Positions 14,091 to 58,099 of a DNA stretch of 64,000 bases are shown piece by piece (the first letter of the stretch is position 1; every line of letters begins with the position of its first letter). A program made the translations under genes and the position numbers. Below the pieces are notes generated by a model that saw only the letters and a list, made by a program, of their open reading frames with translations, ran no database searches and was not told where the DNA came from. This DNA is from Macrostomum lignano (lineage: Eukaryota). The stretch is from contig NIVC01001728.1 in assembly GCA_002269645.1 (NCBI GenBank), positions 49,161 to 113,160 on the forward strand, in the 5' to 3' direction.

Positions 14091-16440
14091 TAGAGGCTAG
14101 AGTTTTCCTGACATTCTGTGCAGCACCCCAGCCAACAATATCAATGTTTGCCTCAAATCCTAATTTTACATGAATGTACTCTATTTTATGTTTAACTCTA
14201 TCCCAACTAATAAATGTTTTTGTTTGAGTTTAATCTCAATATATGCAAAAATAGTTCCGGGGATTGGAATTCCCCGGGTTCAAAATCTGCGGGTTTTAAC
14301 AGCTTGTAATATAACGATACAAGTTAAAACAAAATATATTTAAGTAATCACTAATTTTATAAACTTTTGATCAAAAGACCTGTTCTTGATTCTTGTGTTT
14401 TTTAGGGTTGGGATCCTGGTCCCATGAGAATACAATTTTTCTTAGGATCCCAGGATTTTGAGATTGGGATCAGGATCCTGTCCTACTTCTAATTGATAAC
14501 TTCACTTGTCAATTATTGCTGCTCTTTGTTTGCACTTAAAATTAAACACTATTTTCATACTATTTTTTTCTTCAGTTTCAAGTATTTAGCATTTGATTTA
14601 TTATCCAAAGTTGTGACTAAAAATTATGACAAGAGAAAAGGACACTATATTGAATTTTTTCATTTTTTATTCATTTTAATAATAGCAATTAGCCTAGGTT
14701 TCTACCTGCACAATTTTTTACCCTGCACAAAAATAATTTTGTTGTGAGTGGCAGCATTAGACTACACTTTAACTGCACCCACTTTTTAATTTTAGGGTGC
14801 AATTTCAAAATTTAGGGTAAATACATATACTATATCATTCAAAAAAAGCCAAGACATGTTTTATAGCATATTTTTATGCTAGTATTTTTAAGTCTCATAG
14901 TTTGGTCTTTGTTTTTGTATACAACTATATTTATTTAGTATTCAACAGCATTTGTAAATTGAGTTTACAATAGTTTTTATTCGGCCTTAGGCCTAGTAGA
15001 TGACAAACTGACCAAAATATAAAGCATGCCATTGGGCTAGATGACAAAGTTAAAAATTTCAAAGTGTAGGTCAAGACCATTAAAAATTTCTTATTACTTT
15101 TATTAGATAGTAAGCTTATTGTATTGTAGAGACCTAGGCTAGGCCTATAAAGTACATAGTATACTTGCCATTTTTCTATTATTTTATGTTGTATCATATT
15201 GCAAAAAAAATAAACAGGAAACCAAAATTCAAAAAAGGTCCCCGGGTTCAAAGGATGCAAGTAGCAAGTAATACAAGTAGAATGACATTTTTTTTGCACT
15301 GCTAGGCCTAATAATGTGTAGCCTATCTTTACTTTTCAGCAAAGGTTTCAGAATAGGGCCTAATTCATAATACATTTGAAAAGTGTTGCTTAAAAAATCA
15401 TATAAATATATATTGCAACCATTTTTATGCATGCTAAGACCTATTTCATGATTAAAATATAAAAAAAATACTAGGGCTAGGCTAAATCATAAAAAAACTT
15501 GTTATCTAAATCAATTTGATTAACAATTAATGTTATTGATAATATTGACATTATTATTATTAATATTACTGTTAGTAACTAGTATGCAAAAACAAATTAA
15601 TATATTCAAATATTATATTGGACAGCTCATAGAGCTGTTCAATCTGCTGCCTAAGAATTGGGAGGTAGTCGCCCTTAAGGGTAAGTATACCAAAGCCATG
15701 AAGGAGGATCATTGCAATAGTTGCAATGACCATTGATTATTTTTTGCTTTAAAATGCATCCCAGTTTGAAACCAACCCTGAAAATAAATCTTTGCAGTCA
15801 TAGACAAAGTTTTTTACTTGTAGTAGTTAGGTTGAAATTGCAATTTACTTTCTTGAACCTTGTCACTAAATGACCCATAACTTGGCAACAGAATTACCAA
15901 GAGAAACTTTTAACACTCAACTGAAGTATCTTTGCATGTTGCTGTTTAAGATGAATTTTAATTCAGGCAATTTCAATGTGCTAGTTTAAAAGTTATATGC
16001 AAGCAATCAACTATTCCTATGAACAGCCCTTATATATGGTAAATTACAGCTCTGTATATTGTAGAATTCCCTAGATGCATAGACCTAGTCTGTTATTTAT
16101 CATTTATTATTCACGTTGATAATATTTATTTTCACAATCATGAGAACAGCATAAGCAAGTAAAAGAACAAGGCGTATGCTATGCTTCTACCTGCCTAAGC
16201 TTGTTTAAATTGTTAATTTGTATAGTTATTGTCCTTTTTCTTATTGTTGGCATCATGAAACTAAGATCTTGACGCTGGATACACTAAAATAGCAATACCT
16301 TAGTGGTCTCCATATCATCTCCCTCTATTGAGTTCTCTGCATGTTTATAAAAATAGGCAAGTTAGACAAATATACAAAAGGCCCCATTCTGCATACATTA
16401 CCTATCAAAGCAGTTGTCAGTGCATCATATTGCTTAATGC

Positions 16441-16699
16441 ATGAGTGCCTCACGCTCAGCTTCACGCTCTCGAAGTGGCAGCCGCAGCCGCAGCCGCAGT
16501 CTCAGTGCCGGCAGAGGCGGAGGCGGCAGTCGCAGCGGCGGGGTTGGCCGTCCAATGGCGCCGCAGTCCAGGTCACCGTCAAGGTCAAGGTCAAAATCGA
16601 GATCTAACAAATCTGAATCGAGGTCGCCCTATCGTTCGCGACCAAGGTCAAGGTCGCCGCCTAGGTCCCATTCTAGATCGAAGTCTCGGGATAGCTATG
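16441..16699 (+). CDS. TRA2: Transformer-2 homolog, coding exon 1 (RS1 domain)
   Basis: MSASRSASRSRSGSRSRSRS... RS-rich. Donor G|GTATGT at 16699/16700 is phase 1 and joins exon 2 in frame (G+AT = Asp). Confidence 0.85.
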
Positions 16700-16720
16700 G
16701 TATGTAGGCTGAGACAACAC

Positions 16721-19700
16721 CCAGACATTGTGGGGAGTGAGGGTGCAGACACCCACAGACACTGGGGAATGAGGGTGCAGACACCCACAGACACTGGGAA
16801 ATGAGGGTACAGAGTACAGACACCCAGAGACACTGGGAAATGAGGGTGCAGACACCCACAGACACTGGGAAATGAGAGTACAGACACCCAGAGACACTGG
16901 GGAATAAGGGTGCAGACACCAACAGACACTGGAGAATGAGGGTGCAGACACCCACAGACACTGGGGAATGGGGGTGCAGACACCCAGAGATACTGGGGAA
17001 TGAGGGTGCAGACACCCACAGACACTGGGGAATGAGGGTGCAGACACCCACAGACACTGGGGAATGAGGGTGCAGACACCCACAGACACTGGGAAATGAG
17101 GGTACAGAGTACAGACACCCAGAGACACTGGGTAATTGGGGTGCAGACACCCAGAAATACTGGGAAATGAGGGTGCAGACACCTACAGACACTGGGAATG
17201 AGGGTGCAGACACATACAGACACTGGGAATGAGGGTGCAGACACCTACAGACACTGGGAATGAGGGTGCAGACACCTACAGACACTGGGAATGAGGGTGC
17301 AGACACCCAGAGACACTGGGGAATGAGGGTGCAGACACCAACAGACACTGGAGAATGAGGGTGCAGACACCCACAGACACTGGGGAATGAGGGTGCAGAC
17401 ACCCACAGACACTGGGAATGAGAGTGCAGACACCCAGAGACACTGGGAATAAGGGTGCAGACACCAACAGACACTGGAGAATGAGGGTGCAGACACCCAC
17501 AGACACTGGGGAATGAGGGTGCAGACACCCAGAGACACTGGGGAATGAGGGTGCAGACACCCAGAGACACTGGGGAATGAGGGTGCAGACACCCACAGAC
17601 ACTGGGGAATGAGGGTGCAGACACCCACAGACACTGGGGAATGAGGGTGCAGACACCCACAGACACTGGGAAATGAGGGTACAGAGTACAGACACCCAGA
17701 GACACTGGGGAATGGGGGTGCAGACACCCAGAGATACTGGGAAATGAGGGTGCAGACACCTACAGACACTGGGAATGAGGGTGCAGACACCTACAGACAC
17801 TGGGAATGAGGGTGCAGACACCTACAGACACTGGGAATGAGGGTGCAGACACCTACAGACACTGGCAATGAGGGTGCAGACACCCACAGACACTGGGGAA
17901 TGAGGGTGCAGACACCAACAGACACTGGAGAATGAGGGTGCAGACACCCACAGACACTGGGGAATGAGGGTGCAGACACCCACAGACACTGGGAAATGAG
18001 GGTACAGAGTACAGACACCCAGAGACACTGGGAAATGAGGGTGCAGACACCCACAGACACTGGGAAATGAGAGTACAGACACCCAGAGACACTGGGGAAT
18101 AAGGGTGCAGACACCAACAGACACTGGAGAATGAGGGTGCAGACACCCACAGACACTGGGGAATGGGGTGCAGACACCCAGAGACACTGGGGAATGAGGG
18201 TGCAGACACCCACAGACACTGGGGAATGAGGGTGCAGACACCCACAGACACTGGGGAATGAGGGTGCAGACACCCACAGACACTGGGAAATGAGGGTACA
18301 GAGTACAGACACCCAGAGACACTGGGAATTGGGGTGCAGACACCCAGAACTGGGAAATGAGGGTGCAGACACCTACAGACACTGGGAATGAGGGTGCAGA
18401 CACATACAGACACTGGGGAATGAGGGTGCAGACACCTACAGACACTGGGAATGAGGGTGCAGACACCTACAGACACTGGGAATGAGGGTGCAGACACCCA
18501 CAGACACTGGGGAATGAGGGTGCAGACACCAACAGACACTGGAGAATGAGGGTGCAGACACCCACAGACACTGGGAATGAGGGTGCAGACACCCACAGAC
18601 ACTGGGGAATGAGAGTGCAGACACCCAGACACTGGGAATAAGGGTGCAGACACCAACAGACACTGGGAATGAGGGTGCAGACACCCACAGACACTGGGAA
18701 TGAGGGTGCAGACACCCAGAGACACTGGGAATGAGGGTGCAGACACCCAGAGACACTGGGAATGAGGGTGCAGACACCCACAGACACTGGGGAATGAGGG
18801 TGCAGACACCCACAGACACTGGGGAATGAGGGTGCAGACACCCAGAGACACTGGGGAATGGGGTGCAGACACCCAGAGACACTGGGAAATGAGGGTGCAG
18901 ACACCTACAGACACTGGGAATGAGGGTGCAGACACACAGACACTGGGAATGAGGGTGCAGACACCTACAGACACTGGGAATGAGGGTGCAGACACCTACA
19001 GACACTGGGAATGAGGGTGCAGACACCCAGAGACACTGGGGAATGAGGGTGCAGACACCAACAGACACTGGAGAATGAGGGTGCAGACACCACAGACACT
19101 GGGAATGAGGGTGCAGACACCCACAGACACTGGGGAATGAGAGTGCAGACACCCAGAGACACTGGGGAATAAGGGTGCAGACACCCAGAGACACTGGGGA
19201 ATGAGGGTGCAGACACCCACAGACACTGGGGAATGAGGGTGCAGACACCCAGAGACACTGGGGAATGAGGGTGCAGACACCCAGAGACACTGGGGAATGA
19301 GGGTGCAGACACCCACAGACACTGGGGAATGAGGGTGCAGACACCCAGAGACACTGGGGAATGAGGGTGCAGACACCTACAGACACTGGGAATGAGGGTG
19401 CAGACACCCACAGACACTGGGGAATGAGGGTGCAGACACCCACAGACACTGGGAAATGAGAGTGCAGACACCCAGAGACACTGGGGAATAAGGGTGCAGA
19501 CACCAACAGACACTGGAGAATGAGGGTGCAGACACCCACAGACACTGGGGAATGAGGGTGCAGACACCCAGAGACACTGGGGAATGAGGGTGCAGACACC
19601 TACAGACACTGGGAATGAGGGTGCAGACACCCACAGACACTGGGGAATGAGGGTGCAGACACCCACAGACACTGGGAAATGAGAGTGCAGACACCCAGAG

Positions 19701-20400
19701 ACACTGGGGAATAAGGGTGCAGACACCAACAGACACTGGAGAATGAGGGTGCAGACACCCACAGACACTGGGAATGAGGGTGCAGACACCCAGAGACACT
19801 GGGAATGAGGGTGCAGACACCCACAGACACTGGGGAATGAGGGTGCAGACACCTACAGACACTGGGAATGAGGGTGCAGACACCTACAGACACTGGGAAT
19901 GAGGGTGCAGACACATACAGACACTGGGGAATGAGGGTGCAGACACCCACAGACACTGGGGAATGAGGGTGCAGACACCCACATACACTGGGGAATGAGG
20001 GTGCAGACACCCACAGACACTGGGGAATGAGGGTGCAGACACCCACGGACACTGGGGAATGAGGGTGCAGACACCCACAGACACTGGGCAATAAGGGTGC
20101 AGACACCCACAGACACTGGAGAATGAGGGTGCAGACACCCACAGACACTGGGCAATGAGGGTGCAGACACCCACAGACACTGGGGAATGAGGGTGCAGAC
20201 ACCCAGAGACACTGGGGAATGAGGGTGCAGACACCCAGAGACACTGGGAATGAGGGTGCAGACACCCACAGACACTGGGGAATGAGGGTGCAGACACCCA
20301 CAGACACTGGGAATGAGGGTGCAGACACCCACAGACACTGGGGAATGAGGGTGCAGACACCCAGAGACACTGGGGAATGAGGGTGCAGACACCTAGAGAC
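16721..20400. repeat. 31/32-bp minisatellite (GAGGGTGCAGACACCCACAGACACTGGG(G)AAT), about 115 copies, filling Tra2 intron 1
   Basis: Unit read directly. It explains all the VSAPSFP and CLHPHS antisense ORFs. Confidence 0.98.
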
Positions 20401-20450: not shown

Positions 20451-21059
20451 ATCGTCGGGACCGCCGCGCAGCTCCCCGCAGCCGCAGTCGCAGCGGCCGC
20501 AGCCGGGACCGCAATCGCAGCCGGTCGCCGATGTCCAGCCGCAAGCGGCACGTTGGCGACCGGGACAACCCCAAGGCGAGCAAATGCCTCGGCGTGTTCG
20601 GCCTGAGCCTGCGCACCACAGAGGAGGATCTGCGCCATCTGTTTGGCCGCTACGGCCGGCTGGAGGATGTGCAGCTGGTGAAGGACAACCACACCAGGCG
20701 GTCGCGCGGATTTGCCTTCGTCTATTTTGAATCTCTAGATGACGCCACGTACGCCAAGGAGCGCTGCCACGGCAAAGAGCTGGACGGGCGCAATATGCGT
20801 TGCGATTTTTCCATAACTCGCCGGGCGCACACTCCCACGCCTGGCGTCTATCTTGGCGCACCCGGTGGCGCCCCTTCGCGCGGCTACGGCGGCGGCGGCG
20901 GCTCGCGAAATTATTCGGATCGCGGCGGCGGCTATGGCCGAGACAGGCGTTACGGCGGTGGCGGCGATGGTTACTATGACAACGGAGGCGGCGGCGGTAG
21001 CAGGCGGAGTCGCAGTCGCTCCTACGACAGATCGGATCATCGGAATCGATACGGTTATG
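20451..21059 (+). CDS. TRA2: Transformer-2 homolog, coding exon 2 (RRM plus Gly-rich/RS2 region)
   Basis: Acceptor CCACCCAG|AT. Tra2-diagnostic [24 protein letters not shown] (RNP2), SRGFAFVYF (RNP1) and [18 protein letters not shown]. Phase-1 donor at 21059/21060, with an alternative at 21053/21054. Confidence 0.95.
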
Positions 21060-21099
21060 GTTGGCTCATGAATAATTTGGTTTTAATTATTAGTAACTA

Positions 21100-21450
21100 G
21101 GCACTTCGGTCCTTTGATAGAGATCCACTTCCCTCACTTCCGTCCTTGATGCAGGTCCGCTTTCCTCACTTCTGGTGCTTCATTGGAGGTCCGCTACTTA
21201 CTTTCGGTCCCTTATTGAAGATTCGCTACTCACTTCCGGTCCCTTATTAAAGATCCGCTACTCACTACCGGTCCTTTATTGGAGGTCCGCTACTCACTTC
21301 CGGTCTTTTGATGAAAGTCCGCTACCCACATCCGGTCCTTTATTGGAGGTCCGCTACTCACCCGGTCGGTTATTGGAGTTCCCCTACTCGCTTCCAGTCT
21401 TTTGATGAAGGTCCGCTATTCACTTTCGGTCCTTTGATGGAGGTCCGCTA
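21100..21450. repeat. Degenerate 32-34-bp tandem repeat (GGTCCGCTACTCACTTCCGGTCCTTTATTGGA) in Tra2 intron 2
   Basis: About ten diverged copies read directly. Confidence 0.85.
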
Positions 21451-21609
21451 GAATATGTGGCCGGGGTAGCCTGCCAGCTTCAGCCTCAGCTTTCTTAGCA
21501 CAAGTTTTGGAAGAAAACCATTGAATGTCTGCCTATTAATATTGCAGATATCTTTAATGGTTTCACAATTCTTAGCGTTTAGTAAGGTTAGATTAATTTT
21601 CCTTTTCAG

Positions 21610-21620
21610 ATCGCTACTGA
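21610..21620 (+). CDS. TRA2: Transformer-2 homolog, terminal coding micro-segment (D-R-Y-stop); about 292 aa in total
   Basis: Strong acceptor TTAATTTTCCTTTTCAG|ATCGCTACTGA, phase-1 compatible. The C-terminal RY matches the Tra2 family ending (..RRY). Confidence 0.7.
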
Positions 21621-22175
21621 TGGTCCTGTGCATCCGCGGCCAGGCTTGCAGTTGTGCTGTTTTTAAACTTTGTAAGACTGCCATTGGCCCGGCCACTTCA
21701 ATGCCAGCTATTCTGGGGTGGAATGTACTTTTGTCTGTTGTCACTTTTATTGGTATTTGTTATCTAATCCAGTCCAGTTACAATATGTTATGAATACAAG
21801 TTGGTTTTGTCTCATCCTTCTTACCTGGCAGCAGAAGCGGGCTCGTGTATTCTGAGAGCTGACATCAAACAGATCTGAGCTGACTGTTGGCACTTTAACG
21901 TTCCTTAATACAATATAGTGTTTGTTTTTTGTTCAACTAATTTACTAAACTCAAATCAGCTAATTTAATTTTTTCCCTTCTAAGTTTTTTTTTCTCGTCT
22001 AAACTCTTACTTTGCTACTGTCGTGAGTAGACGTCTTGGGTAATCTGACATTTTGCTCCGACGATACGTTGAACGCAAGGGTTTTTAAAATTAGTTTTAA
22101 ATGATGTTTTACTCTGGTGTTCGTCCGGCCTTTCACTTACGCTTGAAATCCCCCCATTCCGCCTGTTCTATAAAG

Positions 22176-22321
22176 GTTTTCTGAGAAGATTAAGGACAAG
22201 AGTGGCTATTGACAAGTGATGAAGATTAACAAGACGGGTTGACAAGAGAAGTGTGAAGATGATGAGAAGAGAGAACGAAGTAAGACAGTCTGACAGGGCT
22301 AGAAGAAGTGAAGATTTCTAG
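22176..22321 (+). other. Candidate purine-rich (AGAA-rich) non-coding or poison exon downstream of the Tra2 stop
   Basis: Acceptor CCTGTTCTATAAAG|G at 22175/22176 and perfect donor TAG|GTAAGT at 22321/22322 (second donor CAG|GTAAGT at 22411/22412). Six AGAA and four other NGAA motifs in 146 nt. Confidence 0.5.
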
Positions 22322-23004
22322 GTAAGTTGCTCAAGCCTTTAATAAGATTTTGTGTGAGCTATCCTGCCCGGATCCGTCTGTCTTCTCCTGTGGGTAAAAG
22401 TTGAACTGCAGGTAAGTGCGACCTGGTGATTCATTAATAGTAGTGCTAATAATAACTTTATATATGTCAACTATGAACAAATACAAATAACAATAATAAT
22501 ACTAAACCCTGTGCTCAAGCAAGTCTTATTATAATTCAGCGTTTCATTTCTGTCGGTTTGTACGAAAGTCTCTTTGTTCTTGTTTTCTTTTTATTGCCTC
22601 TGAGCACTATAGCTAAGTAGCATAGATTAAATAAGAGTTTAGTAAGCGCTTTCTTATCAGTCAGCAATATAAGTATACGTAAGCGCCTACTTATAGATAG
22701 ATGACCTGCCATCTGGCAGTCTAGCACTGTGGCTTATCCCCTCACCTTGTGCAGTTCATCTGCTTATAGTACAATAGCAGCCACACGGGCTGCTCACTCA
22801 AGGCATGTTGATGTTGCTGTTTTCCAGAGTATAGGAATTCCTGCAAAAGTGAAACGCTTAGTCGCTTATAGTGTATTTTTTCTCAAGCAAGTTTGACCTT
22901 CCCTTTTTATTGCCATTTATTATACCACTGAAACTAAAACTTAAGAGCTTTCATGCAAAGCTAAAAATTTAAATAAAAGGTCTAAAATCCAGGATGAATA
23001 ATCT

Positions 23005-23950
23005 CCTTCCCAAAGCTAAAATCCCCAATCCCTTATCAATAATCCCCATCCCAAAGCTAAGATCCTCAATCCCTTATCAATAATCCCTATCCCAAAGCAG
23101 AGATCCCCAATCCCTTATCAATAATCTCAATCCCAAAGCTAAGATCCCCAATCACGCATCAATAATCCCAATCCCAAAGCTAAGATCCCCAATCACGCAT
23201 CAATAATCCCACTCCCAAAGCTAAGATCCCCAATCCCTTATCAATAATCCCCTTCCCAAGGCTAAGATCCCCAATCACGCATCAATAATCCCCTTCCCAA
23301 AGCTAAGATTCCCAATCCCTTATCAATAATCCCAATCCCAAAGCTAAGATCCCCAATCACGAATCAATAATCCCCTTCCCAAAGCTAAGATTCCCAATCC
23401 CTTATCAATAATCCCAATCCCAAAGCTAAGATCCCCAATCACGCATCAATAATCCCCATCCCAAAGCTAAGATCCCCTATCACGCATCAATAATCCCCAT
23501 CCAAAAGCTAAGATCCCCAATCACGAATCAATAATCCCCATCCCAAAGCTAAGATCCCCAATCCCTTATCAGTAATCCCCATCCCAAAGCTAAGATCCCC
23601 AACCCCTTATCAGTAATCCCCATCCCAAAGCTAAGATCCCCAACCCCGCATCAATCAATAATCCCCATCCCAAAGCAGAGATACCCAATCCTTTATCAAT
23701 AATCCTCATCCCAAAGCAGAGATCCCCAATCCCGCATCAGTCAATAATCCCCATCCCAAGGCAGAGATCCCCAATCCCGCATCAATCAATAATCCCCATC
23801 CCAAAGCAGAGATCCCCAATCCCGCATCAATCAATAATCCCCATCCCAAAGCAGAGATCCCCAATCCCGCATCAATCAATAATCCCCATCCCAAAGCTGA
23901 GATCCCCAATCCCGCATCAAGAATCCCCATCCCAAAGCTGATATCCCCAA
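23005..23950. repeat. 41-bp minisatellite grading into a 45-bp variant (ATCCCCAATCCCTTATCAATAATCCCCATCCCAAAGCTAAG)
   Basis: Read directly; lies between Tra2 and NELF-B. Confidence 0.95.
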
Positions 23951-24188
23951 CCGCGAGTATGCAAAAAATATCTAAGTGATACTTTCGATGTTTACACGTG
24001 CCAGTTGGTCAGGTAGTGATTACCGAGTGAAAATAGTAACATTAATTACAGATTTAGTATAGTTAGAAGTAAAATACACCTTGAGCGCACAAGTTGGTCT
24101 CATTTGTTCCAGCGCAAATCATTTGCCTCAAAGTCTAACAGAACTGGAAGGCCCATAGTAACAGATTGTTTCGACTAATTAACCAAGC

Positions 24189-24413
24189 ATGTCTTCATCC
24201 GCGCCGGCAAACTTCAAAGACGCCCTGCGCAGACACCTGGACTCGAGCAGTAACCGCTTGCCCAATGAGATCATTGAGTCCTGGCAGGCTGAGAACTCCA
24301 TCCGCCTGCCATCGCTGGACGCGGCTCTGCCTCTGCTGGACCGGGTGAAGGTTCGGCGGTACGACTTCTACCAGGCCACCGCTGAGCTGCTGCGGGACCG
24401 CCTGCTCACCCGG
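24189..24413 (+). CDS. NELFB: Negative elongation factor B (COBRA1), exon 1
   Basis: IIESWQAENSIRLPSLDAALPLLD...FYQATAELLRDRLLTR matches the NELF-B N-terminus (AIEQFQTENGVLLPSLQSALPFLD...LRDKLLER). Donor CGG|GTGAGT, phase 0. Confidence 0.92.
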
Positions 24414-24440
24414 GTGAGTACAGCTGCACCCACCCCACTC

Positions 24441-25040
24441 TCAGGATCTCAACTCTACCCACCCCAACTCCATCTCAACTCTACCCACCCCAACTCTCAT
24501 CATCTCAACTCTACCCACCCCCACTCTCAGCATCTCAACTCTACCCTCCCCAACTCTCAGCATCTCAACTCTACCCACCCCAACTCTCAGCATCTCAACT
24601 CTACCCTCCCCAACTCTCAGCATCTCAACTCTACCCACCCCAACTCTCAGCATCTCAACTCTACCCACCCCCACTCTCAGCATCTCAACTCTACCCACCC
24701 CAACTCTCAGCATCTCAACTCTACCCTCCCCAACTCTCAGCATCTCAACTCTACCCACCCCAACTCTCAGCATCTCAACTCTACCCACCCCCACTCTCAG
24801 CATCTCAACTCTACCCACCCCAACTCTCAGCATCTCAACTCTACCCTCCCCAACTCTCAGCATCTCAACTCTACCCACCCCAACTCTCAGCATCTCAACT
24901 CTACCCACCCCAACTCTCAGCATCTCAACTCTACCCACCCCCACTCTCAGCATCTCAACTCTACCCACCCCCACTCTCAGCATCTCAACTCTACCCTCCC
25001 CAACTCTCAGCATCTCAACTCTACCCACCCCAACTCTGCA
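24441..25040. repeat. 30-bp minisatellite (CATCTCAACTCTACCCACCCCAACTCTCAG), about 19-20 copies, in NELF-B intron 1
   Basis: Read directly; translates in frame as HLNSTHPNSQ. Confidence 0.97.
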
Positions 25041-25073
25041 TCTCAGCTCCACCAACTCAAAAAATCTGCCCAG

Positions 25074-25493
25074 ATCCGAGAGCTGGCCGCCACAGGTCGC
25101 CGTTCGAGTTACAAACGAATGGCCGAACTGCTCGAAGCGTCGTTTCCTTACCTGTCGGTGCCGACTCTCCGACCTGTGCCGATGACGCTGCTGGAGCACC
25201 TGACCACCCTGCTGGAGATGCACAAGCCAGCGGTGCGCCCCCGGCTCAAGGACAAGTACTTAAAAGCGATTGCCAGCTCCGCAGAGCTCTACTCTGCCGC
25301 TCCCGTGGCAGTTAAACGTTTAATCTGGGAAGGCGATCCCAAACTATTCGTGTCCGAGATATCGCCTCTGTTGGACGAATTTGTCCGATCCAGAGCCGTC
25401 ACTGGCCTGTGCCTGGCCGACATTGACCAGCCGATGTTGACTGTGCCGTCCAAGACTCGGCGCCAGCTGCCCGTGATTCAGCATCTTCTGCAG
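25074..25493 (+). CDS. NELFB: NELF-B exon 2
   Basis: Acceptor TCTGCCCAG|ATC. YKRMAELLEASF, VAVKRLIW, SPLL and PSKTRRQ match NELF-B. Donor CAG|GTTGGA, phase 0. Confidence 0.92.
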
Positions 25494-25497
25494 GTTG

Positions 25498-26625
25498 GAA
25501 TTGAGCAGACATTGAATAGACATTGAGCAGGCATTGAACAGACATTGAATGGACATTGAGCAGGCACTGAATGGACATTGAGCAGGCATTGAGCAGGCAT
25601 TGAACAGACATTGAATGGACATTGAGCAGGCACTGAATGGACATTGAGCAGGCATTGAGCAGGCATTGAACAGACATTGAATGGACATTGAGCAGGCACT
25701 GAATGGACATTGAGCAGGCATTGAGCAGGCATTGAACAGACATTGAATAGACATTGAGCAGGCATTGAATGGACATTGAGCAGGCATTGAATAGACATTG
25801 AGCAGGCATTGAGCAGGCATCGAGCAGGCATTGAATAGACATTGAGCAGGCATTGAGCAGGCATTGAATGGACATTGAGCAGGCATTGAATAGACATTGA
25901 GCAGGCATTGAATGGACATTGAGCAGGCATTGAATAGACATTGAGCAGGCATTGAGCAGGCATCGAGCAGGCATTGAATAGACATTGAGCAGGCATTGAG
26001 CAGGCATTGAATGGACATTGAGCAGGCATTGAATAGACATTGAGCAGGCATTGAGCAGGCATCGAGCAGGCATTGAATAGACATTGAGCAGGCATTGAGC
26101 AGGCATTGAATGGACATTGAGCAGGCATTGAACAGGCATCGAGCAGGCATTGAATAGACATTGAGCAGGCATTGAGCAGGCATTGAACAGACATTGAGCA
26201 GGCATTGAGCAGGCATTGAATGGACATTGAGCAGGCATTGAACAGGCATCGAGCAGGCATTGAATAGACATTGAGCAGGCATTGAGCAGGCATTGAATGG
26301 ACATTGAGCAGGCATTGAATAGACATTGAGCAGGCATTGAGCAGGCATTGAATGGACATTGAGCAGGCATTGAATAGACATTGAGCAGGCATTGAGCAGG
26401 CATTGAATGGACATTGAGCAGGCATTGAATAGACATTGAGCAGGCATTGAGCAGGCATTGAATGGACATTGAGCAGGCATTGAATAGACATTGAGCAGGC
26501 ATTGAATAGACATTGAGCAGGCATTGAGCAGGCATTGAATGGACATTGAGCAGGCATTGAATAGACATTGAGCAGGCATTGAGCAGGCATTGAACAGACA
26601 TTGAGCAGGTATTGAGCAGGCACTG
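25498..26625. repeat. 11-bp composite minisatellite (CATTGAGCAGG / CATTGAAT(A/G)GA), about 100 units, in NELF-B intron 2
   Basis: Read directly; source of the NACSM and QCLLN ORFs. Confidence 0.97.
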
Positions 26626-26741
26626 AGAGTTACTGAGTAGGCCGAACGAAGCATTCGATAAACGCTGACTAGGCACCGATTATTAACTCAGTAAACACTG
26701 AGTAGGCAGCAAGCAAGCCGCTCCCACTTTTCCCCTCGCAG

Positions 26742-27384
26742 CTGATCGGAACATCCTCTTTCCTGTACGAGCAAACCGTGGCCTGCCTCCGGGAAAAGTA
26801 CAAATGCACCGGAGCCCTGGAGGCCTGCACCCTCCGCATGGATTTGCTCATGTCGCTGCATGACGCTAAAATTGATGACGTCTGCGTTCGCGACCCGCTG
26901 CACAAATTTGCCTGGGTGCTGGACGCCTGCGGCCGGGACAGGGTGTCCGAAATCCGCCGCCTGACTGAACTGCGCAGTTTCTACAAGGCCGCCAAATCTG
27001 CCGTCAAATCTGCCGCGGCGGCTGCTGCTGCCGATGAAGGCGAGGACAACCGGGTGGGAGCTGCGCAGCTGGGCGAAGTGTCCCTGCTGTGCGCCTGTCC
27101 GCACATTCAAGCCACCCTGGCGCTGTGCCTGCTGTCCAGACTGGACCAGCTGGTGCTGGCCGCCCAGCTGCCCAGGACCGACTCCATCTGCAGATTCCTT
27201 GTCCGGCTGCTGCAGCTGGGACTGTCGGCCTGGGAGCTGGTGAGGCAGGACGATCAGCACCAGCAGCAGCTCGGCTGGCTCAGCGAGTCCGTGGCAGCCT
27301 GCGAACTGCTGCCCAGCGTGGCCAGGCTCAGGCTCGAGACCCAGCTCAGGCTGGTTGGCAGGCAGACTAGGAGGCTGTTACCAG
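26742..27384 (+). CDS. NELFB: NELF-B exon 3
   Basis: Acceptor TTTTCCCCTCGCAG|CTG. CTLRMDLLMSLHD..DP.HKF.W.LDAC matches NELF-B. Donor CCAG|GTGAGA, phase 1. Confidence 0.93.
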
Positions 27385-27790
27385 GTGAGATGGGTGGGTG
27401 AGGCTGTTACCAGGTGAGATGGGTGGGTGAGGCTGTTGCCAGGTGAGATGGGTGGGTGAGGCTGTTGCCAGGTGAGATTAGTGGGTGAGGCTGTTACCAG
27501 CTGAGATGGGTGGGTGAGGCTGTTGCCAGGTGAGATGAGTGGGTGAGGCTGTTACCAGGTGAGATGAGTGGGTGAGGCTGTTGCCAGGTGAGATTAGTGG
27601 GTGAGGCTGTTGCCAGGTGAGATGGGTGAGGCTGTTGCCAGGTGAGATGGGTGAGGCTGTTGCCAGGTGAGCTGGGTGGGTGAGGCTGTTGCCAGGTGAG
27701 CTGGGTGGGTGAGGCTGATGCCAGGTGAGCTGGGTGGGTGAGGCTGTTGCCAGGTGAGCTGGGTGGGTGAGGCTGATACCAGATGAGCGG
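27371..27790. repeat. 29-bp minisatellite containing the exon-3 donor (GAGGCTGTTGCCAG|GTGAGATGGGTGGGT), about 15 copies
   Basis: The unit begins inside the exon and spans the splice junction. Confidence 0.96.
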
Positions 27791-28329
27791 GGTGGATGAC
27801 TGCTTGAGCTTCTGTTGTGTTTAGACAAAGACTTGAACATTTTAAACGCATCTTCGATGTATATCGGTTGTCTGCTTTCTTAATCTTAGTTTGTCTGCGC
27901 TGTCACTGTCAGGAATTGGTTGCCATTAAGTAATCGCCTTAAGCTGACAGAATATTTTGCATTGCCTTTTTCCAAAGCGATAAGAAAAATTAGTTTCTTA
28001 GACAATTTGCCGATTATTCAGAATCTGTCTTGTTCGCCCCTTTGCTTGAGGCGAATTTAATTGAGCTAATTGATTTCCCGGGCGGTTGTGCAAGGCGCAT
28101 CGGAGGACAGTGGCGAAAATGGGATCTTATCCTTTTAAATCCGCTGTTAAGACGAACGGGGGCGAATGGCGCTGGATGCGAGTCGCTCTGTACCAGAGGC
28201 GATTTTCTGCCATGTCTTATATGGCGGCAGAAATTTGTCTCTATCCACTTTCCATATTTGTCCAGAACTGAGCTTTGCGACAGAATTTGAGTTCGGTTTC
28301 ATTGCAACATAATGCTGTCGTGTCAGACT

Positions 28330-28970
28330 AAATGTCAGTGAAGTGTCAGGCGAATGTCAGTGTAGTATCAGGCCAATGTCAGTGTAGTGTCAGGCCAATG
28401 TCAGTTTAGTGTCAGGCCAATGTCAGTGTACTGTCAGTCCAATGTCAGTGTACTGTCAGTCCAATGTCAGTGTAGTGTCAGGCCAATGTCAGTGTAGTGT
28501 CAGGCCAATGTCAGTATAGTGTCAGTACAATGTCAGTGTACTGTCAGGCCAATGTCAGTATAGTGTCAGTCCAATGTCAGTGTACTGTCAGGCCAATGTC
28601 AGTGTAGTGTCAGTACAATGTCAGTGTACTGTCAGGCCAATGTCAGTGTAGTGTCAGGCCAATGTCAGTGTAGTGTCAGGCCAATGTCAGTGTAGTGTCA
28701 GGCCAATGTCAGTGTAGTGTCAGGCCAATGTCAGTATAGTGTCAGTACAATGTCAATGTACTGTCAGGCCAATGTCAGTGCATTGTCAGGCCAATGTCAA
28801 TATAGTGTCAGGCCAATGTCAGTATAGTGTCAGTACAATGTCAGTGTACTGTCAGGCCAATGTCAGTGTAGTGGCAGGCCAATGTCAGTGTAGTGGCAGG
28901 CCAATGTCAGTGTAGTGGCAGGCCAATGTCAGTGTACTGTCAGGCCAATGTCAGTATAATGTCAGGCAAG
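28330..28970. repeat. 22-bp minisatellite (GTGTCAGGCCAATGTCAGTGTA) in NELF-B intron 3
   Basis: Period of 22 checked (28387, 28409). Confidence 0.95.
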
Positions 28971-31829: not shown

Positions 31830-32900
31830 CCCTCCCAGATCCCCAGTTGCTGGGCCAGGTTCCCAGATCCTCAGTTGCTGGGCAGCCAGCCTCCCAGATC
31901 CCCAGTTGCTGGGCCAGGTTCCCAGATCCTCAGTTGCTGGGCAGCCAGCCTCCCAGATCCCCAGTTGCTGGGCCAGGTTCCCAGATCCCCAGTTGCTGGG
32001 CAGCCAGCCTCCCAGATCCCCAGTTGCTGTGCCAGGTTCCCAGATCCCCAGTTGCTGGGCAGCCAGCCTCCCAGATCCTCAGTTGCTGAGCCAGCCTCCC
32101 AGATCCTCAGTTGCTGAGCCAGCCTCCCAGATCCTCAGTTGCTGAGCCAGCCTCCCAGATCCTCAGTTGCTGGGCCAGCCTCCCAGATCCTCAGTTGCTG
32201 GGCCAGCCTCCCAGATTCTCAGTTGCTGGGCCAGCCTCCCAGATCCTCAGTTGCTGGGCCAGCCTCCCAGATCCTCAGTTGCTGGGCCAGCCTCCCAGAT
32301 CCTCAGTTGCTGGGCCAGCCTCCCAGATCCTCAGTTGCTGGGTCAGGTTCCCAGATCCTCAGTTGCTGGGCCAGCCTCCCAGATCCTCAGTTGCTGGGCC
32401 AGCCTCGCAAATCCTCAGTTGCTGGGCCAGTATCCCAGATCCTCAGTTGCTGGGCCAGTATCCCAGATCCTCAGTTGCTGGGCCAGTATCCCAAATCCTC
32501 AGTTGCTGGGCCAGCCTCCCAGATCCTCAGTTGCTGGGCCAGCCTCCCAGATCCTCAGTTGCTGGGCCAGTATCCCAGATCCTCAGTTGCTGGGCCAGCC
32601 TCCCAGATCCTCAGTTGCTGGGCCAGCCTCCCAGATCCTCAGTTGCTGGGCCAGCCTCCCAGATCCTCAGTTGCTGGGTCAGGTTCCCAGATCCTCAGTT
32701 GCTGGGCCAGCCTCCCAGATCCTCAGTTGCTGGGCCAGCCTCCCAGATCCTCAGTTGCTGGGCCAGCCTCCCAGATCCTCAGTTGCTGGGTCAGGTTCCC
32801 AGATCCTCAGTTGCTGAGCCAGCCTCCCAGATCCTCAGTTGCTGGGCAGCCAGCCTCCCAGCTCCTCAGTTGCTGGGCAGCCAGCCTTCCAGCTCCTCAG
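31830..32900. repeat. 28-bp minisatellite (CCTCCCAGATCCTCAGTTGCTGGGCCAG), block 1, starting about 35 nt after the NELF-B stop
   Basis: Read directly; source of the SQILSC and DPQLLG ORFs. Confidence 0.97.
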
Positions 32901-33529
32901 TTTCAGTCAATTTCGAGCAACTATCCTGCAACATTCTGCACATCCGAGTCGCATTATTGTACAGTACAAACGCCTGATTCGTCCCACATTTTTGCCTTTT
33001 AAAATAAACTCGCATACTCTGCTTGGCCATCTGCAATACTCTCGCGGGCTGCTAGTTAAGTGTAACTCGATAATCGCCACAATGCTCTGTTTGACCGCCT
33101 ACTTTAATAAGCACTCTTAAATCTCATGACGGCTAATCTGCCGCCTGTTGCTAAGCCGCTGCTGGGGCATTTTTAAGCCCCCCATCCTTAGGAGAGTTGA
33201 GGCAGATTAGTCGATGAAGCTTTGACTTTGCCAGCTTCGCTTGAGCAAATCCCGCGTCTTAAGGACGAGTCTCTTTCCAATGGGCTTACCCAAGAACTAA
33301 TTCCGTACCTGTCTGATTTGCCTGAGAAGATCGGCTTTCTATGAGCATATTACTGTAAATCGGTTTTTAAGCAAAAAAAAGTTGCTTTGAAAAGCAGCTT
33401 TGATGCCTGAACCACATTGAACACGACTTGAAGAGAACTTGTCGGATTTGTCGCTGCCACAGCTGCACTTGTAATGGAGCCGATGTACTTTGCGAGTTGG
33501 GCTCCCAGATCTAGATCTGAAGGCTTCAC

Positions 33530-34175
33530 TAGCTGGGTCAGCCTTCCAGATCCTCAGTTGCTGGGCCAGCCTCCCAGATCCTCAGTTGCTGAGCCAGCCT
33601 TCCAGATCCTCAGTTGCTGGGCAAGCCTCCCAGATCCTCAGTTGCTGAGCCAGCCTCCCAGATCCTCAGTTGCTGGGCCAGCCTCCCAGATCCTCAGTTG
33701 CTGGGCCAGCCTCCCAGATTCTCAGTTGCTGGGCCAGCCTCCCAGATCCTCAGTTGCTGGGCCAGCCTCCCAGATCCTCAGTTGCTGGGCCAGCCTCCCA
33801 GATCCTCAGTTGCTGGGCCAGCCTCCCAGATCCTCAGTTGCTGGGTCAGGTTCCCAGATCCTCAGTTGCTGGGCCAGCCTCCCAGATCCTCAGTTGCTGG
33901 GCCAGCCTCGCAAATCCTCAGTTGCTGGGCCAGTATCCCAGATCCTCAGTTGCTGGACCAGCCTCCCAGATCCTCAGTTGCTGGGCCAGCCTCCCAGATC
34001 CTCAGTTGCTGGGCCAGCCTCCCAGATCCTCAGTTGCTGGGCCAGGTTCCCAGATCCTCAGTTGCTAGGCCAGCCTCTCAGATCCTCAGTTGCTGGACCA
34101 GATCCTCAGTTGCTGGGCAGCCAGCCTCCCAGATACTCAGTTGCTGGACCAGCCTCCCAGATCCTGAGTTGCCGG
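33530..34175. repeat. 28-bp minisatellite, block 2
   Basis: Same unit and same order of variants as block 1, at an offset of 1503 bp. Confidence 0.97.
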
Positions 34176-34529
34176 ACATGTTCTATCTAAGGACTTCAGA
34201 AGACTCTCGTCCGAGGTCATGAAGACGGAGTTTTATTCATCGCACTCGTACATTCCAGCTTGGGTACTGAATCTGTGACTTTCCCGAAATGATAAAGTAT
34301 CTGCCCAGCCCCTGTGAGTGTGGCGGGGAGCCGCATCCTGAGCAGCGGTGCTCTGCTCCAACCCCGGCCCGGCGAATAGCTATCTAGCTCGGCTCCCTCA
34401 CCTGTTTCTCCTCTCACAGGTACAGTGACGGCAGGTTATAAATTTAATCAAGCTGCACAGCCTTACCAGCCCACTGAAGCCAGAAACTGAGAATTGGGCA
34501 ACACCTGAGCTCTTGAATTCCCCGATCCA

Positions 34530-39563: not shown

Positions 39564-39589
39564 CCCCTACTGCTTTTTATAGTGGTTGT

Positions 39590-57850: not shown

Positions 57851-58099
57851 TCTATAAAAGAGAAAAAATAAAGACAGAAAAGAGGACTTATGAATTAGGA
57901 CTTAGAGTTTGCACAAGTACTGCATTTGGAGTACAGTTAAAATGTAATCGTCAGCACTCATCAGCAAGCAATTGCGCGCGAAGGAACAAAGCGCATAGCC
58001 AGAAACAATTGCACAATGCACAGTATGTACATAGTATTTCGTGCACAAGTGATACGCATCGAATTACACCTTAACTTACTCCAAATGCAGTACTTGTTT

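What the first reader, a model, noticed from the sequence alone, without database searches (positions are those of the whole stretch)
21610..22420. Candidate Tra2 autoregulatory AGAA-rich poison exon located 3' of the stop codon
Seen in sequence: 22176-22321 is bounded by an acceptor (TTCTATAAAG|G) and a perfect donor (TAG|GTAAGT), with a second perfect donor at 22411/22412. It holds six AGAA and four other NGAA motifs in 146 nt, within otherwise T-rich sequence. A possible donor TT|GTAAGA at 21671/21672 lies 51 nt after the Tra2 stop. Established: Tra2 proteins bind (A)GAA repeats, and vertebrate TRA2A/B limit their own levels through AGAA-rich poison exons near the 5' end. Junctions more than 50-55 nt downstream of a stop can trigger NMD. 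Inference: inclusion of this exon would add a distal junction (about 200 nt after the stop in the 3'-UTR route). Splicing exon 2 directly to it gives GFLRRLRTRVAIDK-stop, 102 nt before its donor. Either route would be an NMD switch, and a differently placed, possibly convergent version of Tra2 autoregulation.
Basis: partly seen in the sequence, partly recalled or inferred. Interest (0 to 1): 0.8.

Follow-up and report, generated by a model that had tools for sequence, protein, structure and literature searches.

The report
Ancient GAA-rich exon downstream of tra2
Just after the normal end of the flatworm's tra2 splicing-factor gene lies a short non-coding exon packed with Tra2's own binding motif, and similarly placed exons in a mollusc, a bryozoan, an insect and a tick suggest an old, previously unremarked self-limiting switch.

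Summary
The window is Macrostomum lignano. Its tra2 gene has three coding exons and ends with a tiny D-R-Y-stop segment at 21610-21620.

The segment 22176-22321 holds 10 GAA and 6 [A/T]GAAGA, the Tra2 CLIP consensus. These are all six such sites between the stop and the next repeat array (P<0.0005). All three frames are closed. The two best 5' splice sites in the neighbourhood follow it.

Tra2 loci of an abalone, a bryozoan, a damselfly and a tick each carry their main GAAG cluster 220-1770 nt after the canonical stop. In three of them an annotated CDS or real transcripts join the penultimate exon directly to that cluster and hit an early stop. In the tick, RNA-seq contigs show the exon's donor used 206 nt past that stop. 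The same scan on a shark TRA2B locus finds only the known 5' poison exon.

So the exon call is well supported. The 'TATAAAG' is most likely a weak AAG|G acceptor rather than a TATA box. The element looks shared among protostomes, not a local convergence.

No M. lignano RNA was reachable. Inclusion, NMD sensitivity and Tra2 dependence remain inferred.

The parts
16441..16699 (+). tra2 coding exon 1 (RS1 domain). ATG at 16441, donor TATG|GTATGT. TATAAA at 16346.
   Evidence: Read from the sequence. Phase 1 joins in frame to exon 2. The related cDNA L001 is collinear with it.
20451..21059 (+). tra2 coding exon 2 (RS1 end, RRM, Gly-rich linker, short RS2). Ends in the weak donor TATG|GTTGGC.
   Evidence: ORF and frame. 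The RRM matches human Tra2-beta RRM-RNA complexes 2KXN and 2RRA at E=4e-37, with RNP1 and RNP2 identical. Donor matrix score is -1.2.
21610..21620 (+). Start of the canonical last exon. It completes D-R-Y-stop (TGA 21618-21620) behind a strong acceptor, TTTTCCTTTTCAG|A.
   Evidence: The same phase-1 R-Y-stop micro-segment occurs in Haliotis (GTCGCTATTAA), Hetaerina (GTCGATATTAA) and Bugula (GGCGTTATTAG).
21621..22175 (+). Canonical 3' UTR. In the alternative isoform it is part of the removed intron. It contains the weak candidate donor TT|GTAAGA (21671/2). It also holds variant poly(A) hexamers AATACA and AATATA (21907, 21912) followed by the GU-rich run TGTTTGTTTTTTGTT.
   Evidence: There is no AATAAA or ATTAAA in this interval. 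L001 reads through the GTAAG equivalent.
22150..22175 (+). 3' splice-site region of the alternative exon: pyrimidine tract CCCCCCATTCCGCCTGTTCT, then ATAAAG|G. A branch-point-like CTTAC lies about 38 nt upstream. It overlaps TATAAA at 22169.
   Evidence: Matrix score 2.1, against 3.0-3.6 for verified local acceptors, and in the top 2.8% of AGs. Matching acceptors are ttttataag|GTAATGAAG (Hetaerina), tattactgaag|GTTTTGAAG (Haliotis) and caccaag|GGCTTGGAAG (tick, transcript-verified).
22176..22321 (+). GAA-rich alternative ('poison-type') exon: 10 GAA, 9 GAAG, 6 [AT]GAAGA, 4 ACAAG. Stops in all frames.
22217..22222 (+). Tandem in-frame stops, TGA TGA, reached after GFLRRLRTRVAIDK when exon 2 is joined to 22176.
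   Evidence: They lie 102 nt before donor 1 and 192 nt before donor 2.
22322..22327 (+). Consensus 5' splice site 1 (TAG|GTAAGT).
22412..22417 (+). Consensus 5' splice site 2 (CAG|GTAAGT). Using it would make a 236-nt version of the exon.
   Evidence: score 8.5, the best in the region.
22810..22995 (+). Candidate downstream partner: acceptor TGTTTTCCAG|AG (22827/8) and a roughly 165-nt terminal exon. It carries the only AATAAA (22972) on the + strand between 15783 and 33003, immediately before the 41-bp tandem array.
   Evidence: The AATAAA context TTTAAATAAAAG resembles the poly(A) signals of the two neighbouring genes. Use of this acceptor is inferred, not shown.
24100..24112 (+). Alternative downstream acceptor TTGTTCCAG|CG, 76 nt before the NELF-B ATG (24189). 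It fits both the cis and the spliced-leader acceptor motifs of M. lignano.
   Evidence: Motif [T/C]TNCAG is from PMC8629364.

Best explanation
22176-22321 (or -22411 with the second donor) is the Macrostomum lignano copy of an old protostome tra2 exon. It sits just downstream of the canonical last exon and is built from Tra2 binding motifs.

Proposed mechanism:
- In the productive mRNA, the weak exon-2 donor (21059/60) pairs with the strong nearby acceptor at 21609/10. The protein ends ...YGYDRY, and the message is polyadenylated before or around the GAA-rich segment.
- When Tra2 is abundant, it binds the six [A/T]GAAGA sites. This defines the otherwise weak AAG|G acceptor at 22175/6 and the two consensus donors.
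- Exon 2 is then joined to 22176. This skips the D-R-Y-stop segment together with its 3' UTR.
- Translation stops 14 codons in, at TGA TGA. The exon's donors splice on to a downstream acceptor. 22827/8 with AATAAA at 22972 is the simplest candidate. The NELF-B acceptor at 24112/3 is the alternative.
- That leaves an exon junction 102 or 192 nt after the stop, which should send the mRNA to nonsense-mediated decay.
- The net effect is negative feedback on Tra2 level.

Shown: the sequence anatomy, the statistical excess of motifs, the positional match in four other protostome loci, and transcript-level use of the matching exon and its donor in a tick.

Inferred: inclusion in M. lignano, the downstream partner, Tra2 binding, and NMD.
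For: - Motif cluster and splice signals are far beyond chance.
- Species identity: the ML2-derived UniProt models are frameshifted copies identical to the window wherever they are in frame.
- The Tra2 RRM is about 66% identical to human Tra2-beta solved with GAA-containing RNA. RNP1, RNP2 and the flanking segments are conserved.
- Both tra2 introns are filled by tandem arrays, so there is no room for a poison exon at the vertebrate position.
- A GAAG scan (6 or more in 150 nt, gene strand) gives the following. Haliotis has one cluster, at 15565-15813. Bugula has one, at 9499-9603. Hetaerina has two adjacent, at 24583-24955. The tick has one at 35051-35227, plus one about 1 kb further on. All start 220-1770 nt after the canonical stop. 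None lies on the opposite strand.
- The annotated CDS ends at Haliotis 15612, Hetaerina 24603 and tick 35093. These are exactly the early stops inside those exons.
- Nine tick RNA-seq contigs join the penultimate exon to the GAA-rich exon. Three of them, from three different runs, also splice out at GCG|GTAAGC, 206 nt after the stop.
- Many other arthropod Tra2 isoforms switch after ...SYSPR to short alternative ends, such as LEERNKG, FEARGIG, NEARGIG and FESRGIG.
- Positive control: the same scan on a shark TRA2B locus finds only the known exon-2 poison exon and nothing 3'.
Against: - There is no M. lignano RNA evidence. Nine predicted protein variants, including the exon2-to-alt-exon isoform, are absent from the 15-billion-protein collection. 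This is uninformative, because no variant of this allele is present at all.
- Primary sequence does not align between species beyond what composition explains (z from -0.4 to 3.0). The homology argument is positional and architectural only.
- The acceptor has A at -3, whereas the M. lignano cis-acceptor motif is CAG.
- TATAAA at 22169 sits in the same GTT(N)TATAAA context, with CA 28-31 nt downstream, as three real gene starts in the window. A promoter reading is therefore not excluded.
- In insects the alternative peptide (xEARGIG) looks conserved. That hints at a protein-coding role rather than pure decay.
- Six of nine tick contigs read through the donor.
- Purine-rich enhancers also bind other SR proteins.
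- The Haliotis and Hetaerina isoforms are computational gene models that I could not check against reads.
Confidence: 0.55

Rival explanations
1. It is a genuine alternative last-exon choice of tra2, but its purpose is a second protein or UTR isoform rather than decay. That isoform would be Tra2 with a different C-terminal tail and a long alternative 3' UTR. The GAA motifs would simply be the enhancer that makes the distal exon usable.
For: - Database annotations treat the matching exons as coding.
- The short alternative tail is similar across insect orders: FEARGIG, NEARGIG, YDEARGIG, FESRGIG, RKEKGIG.
- Six of nine tick contigs read through the exon's donor into a 3' UTR of more than 2 kb, with no junction after the stop.
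Against: - The M. lignano tail (GFLRRLRTRVAIDK) bears no resemblance to the arthropod or mollusc tails. Peptide conservation therefore does not extend to this species.
- Two perfect donors directly after the exon are hard to explain for a terminal exon.
- Three tick contigs do use the donor.
Confidence: 0.2
2. TATAAAG at 22169 is a TATA box. Transcription would start near the CA at 22197/8. The purine-rich segment would then be the non-coding first exon of NELF-B, spliced from 22321 or 22411 to 24113. Alternatively it is the first exon of a small two-exon non-coding RNA ending at the AATAAA at 22972.
For: - Three of the other + strand genes have TATAAA 28-95 nt before their ATG, in the same GTT(N)TATAAA context with CA at +28 to +31.
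- NELF-B has no TATAAA nearer than this one.
- The acceptor at 24112 and the unit formed by acceptor 22827 plus AATAAA 22972 would both fit.
Against: - It does not explain why the Tra2 motif is piled up here, next to tra2 itself.
- The same '...TATAAG|GT' and 'AAG|G' sequences are acceptors of the matching exon in Hetaerina, Haliotis and tick, where no NELF-B gene was called within the fetched flanks.
- About one TATAAA is expected by chance in this AT-rich 1.4 kb (own arithmetic).
- The purine-rich block starts 14 nt after the TATA, upstream of the predicted start site.
Confidence: 0.1
3. The segment is never spliced as an exon. It would be an element of a long tra2 3' UTR in which Tra2 bound to GAA sites recruits U1 snRNP to the two 5'-splice-site sequences. 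That would inhibit or redirect polyadenylation at ATTAAA 22626 or AATAAA 22972. Alternatively it would drive removal of a 3'-UTR intron from 22322/22412 to 22827.
For: - There is no canonical poly(A) hexamer between the stop and 22626/22972.
- Donors and an acceptor are available.
- From my own knowledge, not checked here: unused 5' splice sites in 3' UTRs inhibit polyadenylation in papillomavirus late mRNAs, and SRSF1 and SRSF2 autoregulate through 3'-UTR splicing.
Against: - The matching exons in three other species are entered through their acceptor from the penultimate exon.
- A plausible proximal poly(A) site exists near 21907-21935, made of variant hexamers plus a GU-rich run.
Confidence: 0.07
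4. It is a chance purine-rich patch with chance splice-site look-alikes and no function.
For: The window was scanned post hoc. Purine-rich low-complexity tracts exist elsewhere in it.
Against: - Local and window-wide simulations never reach the observed motif density.
- Two of the four AGGTAAGT sites in 64 kb lie here.
- The same placement recurs in four independent loci. A rough product of chance placements is about 2e-6 (own arithmetic).
Confidence: 0.03

Closest known systems
Vertebrate TRA2B (exon 2) and TRA2A poison exons
   Same: - A non-coding cassette exon inside the Tra2 gene, dense in GAA/AGAAGA sites bound by Tra2 itself.
- Stops in all frames.
- Inclusion gives an unproductive mRNA and buffers Tra2 level (PMC3240583, PMC11791180).
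- My GAAG scan recovers this exon in a shark locus.
- Both exons begin AAG|GTT... and share short words (TTGACAAGT, GTGTGAAG).
   Different: - Position. The vertebrate exon lies near the 5' end, before the RS1/RRM exons. This one lies after the canonical stop and last exon.
- There is no significant sequence alignment (z 1.4).
- The vertebrate exon is ultraconserved, whereas this class keeps position and motif content but not sequence.
- Function here is untested.
Annotated alternative C-terminal Tra2 isoforms of arthropods and molluscs (NCBI isoforms ending ...SYSPR + FEERNMK.., NEARGIG, LEERNKG, RAWKKE..)
   Same: - Same gene and same place: 0.2-1.8 kb after the R-Y-stop segment.
- Same weak (A)AG|G acceptor, the same early stop, the same GAAG cluster, and a GTAAG donor at the end.
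   Different: - Those entries are treated as protein isoforms. I found no paper describing them as Tra2-site-rich autoregulatory exons (a limited search).
- The M. lignano exon is shorter (146 or 236 nt against 255-325 nt).
- Its tail peptide is unrelated, and it has two consensus donors.
Drosophila tra2 autoregulation by M1 intron retention (own knowledge; mentioned in PMC3240583)
   Same: Tra2 limits its own productive mRNA through splicing of its own transcript. From memory, the fly silencer uses CAAGR repeats, and the M. lignano exon has three CAAGR and four ACAAG.
   Different: The fly mechanism is repression of intron removal near the 5' end in the male germline. It is not activation of a downstream exon.
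SRSF1 and SRSF2 (SC35) autoregulation by splicing in the 3' UTR (own knowledge, not checked here). More generally, unproductive splicing of SR genes arises repeatedly at non-homologous positions (PMC4379411).
   Same: Negative feedback by splicing events located after the normal stop codon, which make the mRNA an NMD target.
   Different: In those cases the normal stop is kept and 3'-UTR introns or exons are spliced. Here, as in the homologues, the favoured route skips the normal stop and creates a new early one.

Membership tests
Vertebrate-type Tra2 autoregulatory poison exon | High density of Tra2 binding motifs (GAA / AGAAGA) within the exon | tested here: met
   10 GAA and 6 [AT]GAAGA in 146 nt. 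P<0.0005 locally, and never reached in 64-kb simulations. Consensus from PMC3240583.
Vertebrate-type Tra2 autoregulatory poison exon | Inclusion introduces a premature stop, with a junction more than 50-55 nt downstream | tested here: met
   Sequence geometry only. The stop at 22217-22219 lies 102 nt before donor 1 and 192 nt before donor 2, and all three frames are closed.
Vertebrate-type Tra2 autoregulatory poison exon | Exon is actually spliced into tra2 transcripts | tested here: inconclusive
   No M. lignano transcript was reachable. The positionally matching exon is spliced into tick RNA-seq contigs and into annotated Haliotis and Hetaerina CDSs.
Vertebrate-type Tra2 autoregulatory poison exon | Location between the first coding exon and the RS1/RRM exons | tested here: not met
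   It lies 555 nt after the canonical stop. Introns 1 and 2 are filled by tandem arrays. The shark control shows the 5' position.
Vertebrate-type Tra2 autoregulatory poison exon | Sequence homology to the vertebrate exon | tested here: not met
   Smith-Waterman score against dinucleotide shuffles gives z 1.4, P 0.09.
Vertebrate-type Tra2 autoregulatory poison exon | Inclusion rises with Tra2 level, and the isoform is degraded by NMD | not testable with these tools
   This needs RNAi or overexpression and NMD inhibition in worms. The RRM is conserved with Tra2-beta RNA complexes, which makes binding plausible only.
Protostome tra2 downstream GAA-rich alternative exon (class defined here from four loci) | Same strand, 0.2-1.8 kb after a canonical terminal R-Y-stop segment that follows a phase-1 intron | tested here: met
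   M. lignano 555 nt, Hetaerina 550 nt, Bugula 365 nt, Haliotis 1773 nt, tick about 220 nt (the tick has lost the intron).
Protostome tra2 downstream GAA-rich alternative exon (class defined here from four loci) | It is the main GAAG cluster of the locus on the gene strand | tested here: met
   In the window, the only other clusters lie in low-complexity purine tracts or tandem arrays.
Protostome tra2 downstream GAA-rich alternative exon (class defined here from four loci) | Weak (A)AG|G acceptor, an early in-frame stop when joined to the penultimate exon, and a GTAAG donor at the 3' end | tested here: met
   ATAAAG|GTTTT, a stop after 14 codons, and two AG|GTAAGT donors. Compare tick GCG|GTAAGC (verified) and Hetaerina ACA|GTAAGT.
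Protostome tra2 downstream GAA-rich alternative exon (class defined here from four loci) | Alignable primary sequence between members | tested here: not met
   z from -0.4 to 3.0 for all pairs. Shared words such as GAAGTGTG are compatible with composition.
TATA-box promoter plus non-coding first exon of NELF-B | TATAAA about 30 nt upstream of a CA initiator, a donor downstream, and an acceptor before the ATG | tested here: inconclusive
   All the sequence elements are present. However, the same motif is an acceptor in homologues. There are no 5'-end data.
SR-protein 3'-UTR unproductive splicing (SRSF1/SRSF2 type) | Normal stop retained, with regulated splicing within the 3' UTR | tested here: inconclusive
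   The 21671/2 donor is weak (score below 1.5). The related cDNA L001 reads through its equivalent. An intron from 22322/22412 to 22827 is possible but unsupported.

The most novel reading that the evidence does not exclude
Feedback control of Tra2 through an exon made of its own GAA binding sites would date back at least to the protostome ancestor, and possibly to the bilaterian ancestor. The original location would be just beyond the canonical last exon. The famous vertebrate exon-2 poison exon would then be a later relocation or replacement of the same device. Both begin AAG|GTT and share words such as TTGACAAGT and GTGTGAAG. This would make it one of the oldest known autoregulatory alternative-splicing circuits in animals, hidden in databases as 'isoform X1' C-terminal variants.
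Probability: 0.25. Interest if true: 0.85.

Novelty: new variant of a known kind. Interest (0 to 1): 0.68.

Why it matters
Tra2 and SR proteins are the textbook case of splicing factors that hold their own level steady through poison exons. For Tra2, that story rests on vertebrates (a 5' ultraconserved exon) and on Drosophila (intron retention).

A GAA-rich exon placed after the normal stop appears in a flatworm, a mollusc, a bryozoan, an insect and a tick. This suggests that most animals may use a third, so far undescribed layout.

It yields a simple, testable prediction in several tractable species: RNAi of tra2 or of NMD factors should shift the isoform ratio.

It would also change how the 'alternative C-terminal isoforms' of Tra2 reported in insect and crustacean sex-determination studies are read. 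Many may be decay substrates rather than proteins.

Finally, it is a clean example of a regulatory exon conserved in position and motif content but not in sequence. Alignment-based conservation scans would miss such elements.

Tried and rejected
- Rfam scan of 21000-24300 at a permissive threshold gave only a chance hit below threshold. The segment is not a known RNA gene.
- Self-BLAST of 21620-22996 against the window found no other copies. It is not a repeat or transposon.
- Coding reading rejected: all three frames are closed, and the longest upstream ORF is 19 codons.
- TATA-box promoter. I favoured this for a while. I downgraded it once homologous acceptors with the same sequence were found.
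- tra2-NELF-B operon or spliced-leader reading. It is compatible with PMC8629364 criteria, but it does not explain the exon and cannot be tested here.
- Direct RNA evidence:
  - Nine exact-sequence variants are absent.
  - M. lignano UniProt models have no contig on record.
  - Supplements of two M. lignano papers lack NELFB and TRA2 entries.
  - A metagenome scan found nothing.
- Several homologue look-ups failed because only the longest isoform of a gene is indexed.
- MAFFT misaligned the 3' UTRs of the window and L001. A local alignment shows only a short TGTAAG.A.TGCCA block.
- Sequence homology among the exons and with the shark poison exon was tested and is not significant.
- The splice-site matrices used are human-like frequencies written from memory. 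They are a rough ranking only.
Full report
**What the window is.**
The sequence is eukaryotic, with GC-rich exons separated by minisatellite arrays. The N-terminal 215 residues of the downstream gene hit a single protein, a Macrostomum lignano entry. The M. lignano UniProt models for Tra2 and NELF-B are identical to the window wherever they are in frame and otherwise run in a shifted frame. So the window is M. lignano itself, and those models carry assembly indels.

On the + strand, tra2 reads as follows:
- Exon 1: 16441-16699.
- Exon 2: 20451-21059.
- A last exon starting at 21610, which contributes only D-R-Y-stop (TGA at 21618-21620).

All junctions are phase 1. NELF-B starts at ATG 24189.

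A 996-nt RNA-seq contig from a relative (L001, 95% identical in the RRM) is collinear with the three exons and lacks both introns. This confirms the canonical splicing pattern.

**Checking the observation.**
That includes the 51 nt, the 102 nt and the peptide GFLRRLRTRVAIDK.

The enrichment is real:
- The Tra2-beta CLIP consensus is AGAAGA, with T as second choice at the first position (PMC3240583).
- [AT]GAAGA occurs six times in 22184-22314 and nowhere else in the 1376 nt between the tra2 stop and the next tandem array.
- Markov simulations of that interval (2000 trials) and of the whole window (200 trials) never reach six.
- GAAGA is over-represented even given the exon's own composition.
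- The other clusters in the window are low-complexity purine tracts.

The two AG|GTAAGT sites are two of only four on this strand in 64 kb. They far outscore the verified donors of tra2 and NELF-B (GTATGT, GTTGGC, GTGAGT, GTTGGA). The segment is unique in the window and matches no Rfam family.

**A rival that looked good at first.**
The 'acceptor' TTCTATAAAG|G contains TATAAA. Three other + strand genes in the window (tra2, and the genes with ATG at 34530 and 41101) have TATAAA 28-95 nt before their ATG. All three sit in the same GTT(N)TATAAA context with a CA 28-31 nt downstream. The candidate has CA at 22197/8.

NELF-B has no nearer TATAAA. It does have a good acceptor, TTCCAG|CG, 76 nt before its ATG. 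So the segment could have been a non-coding first exon of NELF-B. It could also have been the first exon of a small RNA ending at the AATAAA at 22972, the only AATAAA on this strand between 15783 and 33003.

M. lignano also trans-splices about 30% of its genes and has operons. The NELF-B acceptor fits the spliced-leader acceptor motif (PMC8629364). None of these readings explains why Tra2 motifs are concentrated next to tra2.

**The comparative result that decides the exon question.**
I fetched tra2 loci of other animals through proteins returned by the homology search.

*Abalone, Haliotis asinina (L002):*
- The penultimate exon ends ...SYSPPR at CCAC|GTAAGT.
- A micro terminal segment follows, ttctag|GTCGCTATTAA (R-Y-stop).
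- 1773 nt later comes tattactgaag|GTTTTGAAGAAAGAAACATGAAGTGTGTGAAGAATGAAACATGA.
- This segment encodes exactly the C-terminus FEERNMKCVKNET of annotated isoform X1. It is also the only [AT]GAAGA or GAAG cluster in the 21.6-kb locus.

*Damselfly, Hetaerina americana (L004):*
- The R-Y-stop segment is ttttcag|GTCGATATTAA.
- 550 nt later comes ttttataag|GTAATGAAGCGAGGGGTATTGGATGA, giving the tail NEARGIG-stop of isoform X1.
- This opens a 325-nt TGAAG-rich stretch that ends at ACA|GTAAGT.

*Bryozoan, Bugula neritina (L003):*
- The R-Y-stop segment is followed 365 nt later by the locus's only GAAG cluster.

*Tick, Haemaphysalis longicornis:*
- Nine RNA-seq contigs from different runs join the penultimate exon to caccaag|GGCTTGGAAGAAGGAACGAAG...
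- They reach a stop 49 nt into that exon.
- Three of them (L011, L012, L015) leave the genome sequence exactly at GCG|GTAAGC, 206 nt after the stop. They continue in an exon more than 8 kb away.
- Six read through the donor.

The annotated CDS ends (15612, 24603, 35093) coincide with the stops I derive.

Many other hits switch after ...SYSPR to short tails such as LEERNKG, FEARGIG, FESRGIG or RKEKGIG.

M. lignano has the same layout: ttttcag|ATCGCTACTGA, then 555 nt, then ctataaag|GTTTTCTGAGAAGATT. The 'TATAAAG' is therefore best read as the weak AAG|G acceptor typical of this exon.

As a control, the same scan on a shark TRA2B locus (L016) finds one cluster. It is the known vertebrate poison exon between the first exons (it starts ttaag|GTTAAT, matching the junction primer in PMC3240583). 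Nothing is found after the stop.

The chance that the main cluster falls within 2 kb after the stop in all four non-flatworm loci is about 2e-6. This is my own arithmetic from locus lengths, done post hoc.

**Limits of the homology claim.**
Pairwise local alignments of the six exons do not beat dinucleotide shuffles convincingly (z from -0.4 to 3.0). Shared words such as GAAGTGTG or TTGACAAGT are compatible with composition. What is conserved is place, strand, splice-site style, early stop and motif content, not sequence. The Haliotis and Hetaerina isoforms are gene models that I could not check against reads. Only the tick has transcript evidence here.

**Mechanism.**
The M. lignano RRM is about 66% identical to human Tra2-beta solved with GAA-containing RNA, with RNP1, RNP2 and the flanking segments conserved. 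Binding to GAAGA is therefore plausible.

The exon-2 donor is weak, the canonical acceptor is strong, the distal acceptor is weak, and the distal exon is full of enhancer sites followed by perfect donors. This is the classic set-up for a concentration-dependent choice:
- At high Tra2, the distal exon is defined and exon 2 is joined to 22176.
- The D-R-Y-stop segment and its UTR are skipped.
- Translation ends at TGA TGA (22217-22222).
- Use of either donor leaves a junction 102 or 192 nt downstream, which is NMD-competent by the 50-55-nt rule.

The downstream partner is not known. TTCCAG|AG at 22827/8, followed by AATAAA at 22972, is the simplest. The NELF-B acceptor at 24112/3 is possible. 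In the tick, the partner also lies far downstream.

Both tra2 introns are packed with tandem arrays, so there is no space for a vertebrate-position poison exon. This leaves the segment as the only candidate feedback element in the locus.

**What remains open.**
No M. lignano transcript could be reached. Inclusion, Tra2 dependence and NMD are therefore inferences.

The main rival is that the exon makes a functional alternative tail or UTR rather than a decay substrate. The conserved insect tail and the tick read-through contigs point that way. The promoter reading is not excluded.

**Comparison with what is known, and novelty.**
The logic is that of the vertebrate TRA2A/TRA2B poison exons (PMC3240583, PMC11791180). 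The position, and the route by which the normal stop is skipped, differ. It also differs from Drosophila M1 intron retention, and from SRSF1/SRSF2 3'-UTR splicing (own knowledge). Repeated re-invention of unproductive splicing at new positions is known for SR genes (PMC4379411), but that paper does not treat Tra2.

In a limited literature search I found no description of a GAA-rich exon beyond the last exon of invertebrate tra2. I therefore rate it a new variant of a known kind. The added point is that it appears to be shared across protostomes rather than peculiar to this flatworm.

Noticed in passing
window 16717-20400, 21133-21450, 22997-23950, 24428-25053, 25500-26627, 27371-27799, 28316-28967, 31831-32902, 33532-34177: Almost every intron, UTR and spacer around tra2 and NELF-B is filled by its own 21-43-bp minisatellite array. 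Each array starts within 6-70 nt of the donor. Unique sequence is left only at exons, splice sites and short flanks.
   Followed up: partly
window 16421-16451; L001 40-75: The genomic sequence just before the tra2 ATG (CATCATATTGCTTAATGCATG|AGTGCC) resembles the 3' end of the M. lignano spliced leader (...CAATTTATTGCATG, PMC5173321). In the related cDNA L001 the same point is a 3' splice site (ctgctccag|AGTGCC), with no in-frame ATG upstream. In that species the leader probably donates the start codon.
   Followed up: partly
window 24100-24189: NELF-B has a TTCCAG|CG acceptor 76 nt before its ATG that fits the spliced-leader acceptor motif. With the 954-nt array discounted, the gap from the AATAAA at 22972 is about 170 nt. 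That would meet the published operon criterion for a tra2-NELF-B pair.
   Followed up: no
window 20451-21059 and 24189-25494 versus P0004, P0006, P0121: The UniProt M. lignano entries for Tra2 and NELF-B (one of them named 'Transposase') are frameshifted versions of the proteins encoded here. They presumably derive from indel errors in the older assembly.
   Followed up: yes
L016 19346-19640 versus window 22176-22321: The shark TRA2B poison exon and the flatworm exon both start AAG|GTT. They share CxATTGACAAGT and GAAGTG(G/T)GAAGATGA, but the alignment is not significant against shuffles (z 1.4).
   Followed up: yes
L006 34808-35299; L011, L012, L015: In the tick the ancestral last intron is gone. 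R-R-Y-G-Y-Y-stop is read straight through a GGAG|GTACGG donor that is used only in the alternative isoform. The GAA-rich exon then splices to an unidentified exon more than 8 kb downstream.
   Followed up: partly
window 21060 and 25494: Two verified donors in this window are GTTGG (tra2 intron 2 and NELF-B intron 2). This is far from the GT[G/A]AG motif reported for the species.
   Followed up: no
window 39583-40408 and 58075-58867: There is a LINE-type reverse-transcriptase fragment (…YADDLALL…) and mariner-like transposase ORFs on the + strand. AT-rich gene-poor sequence spans 50-57 kb.
   Followed up: no
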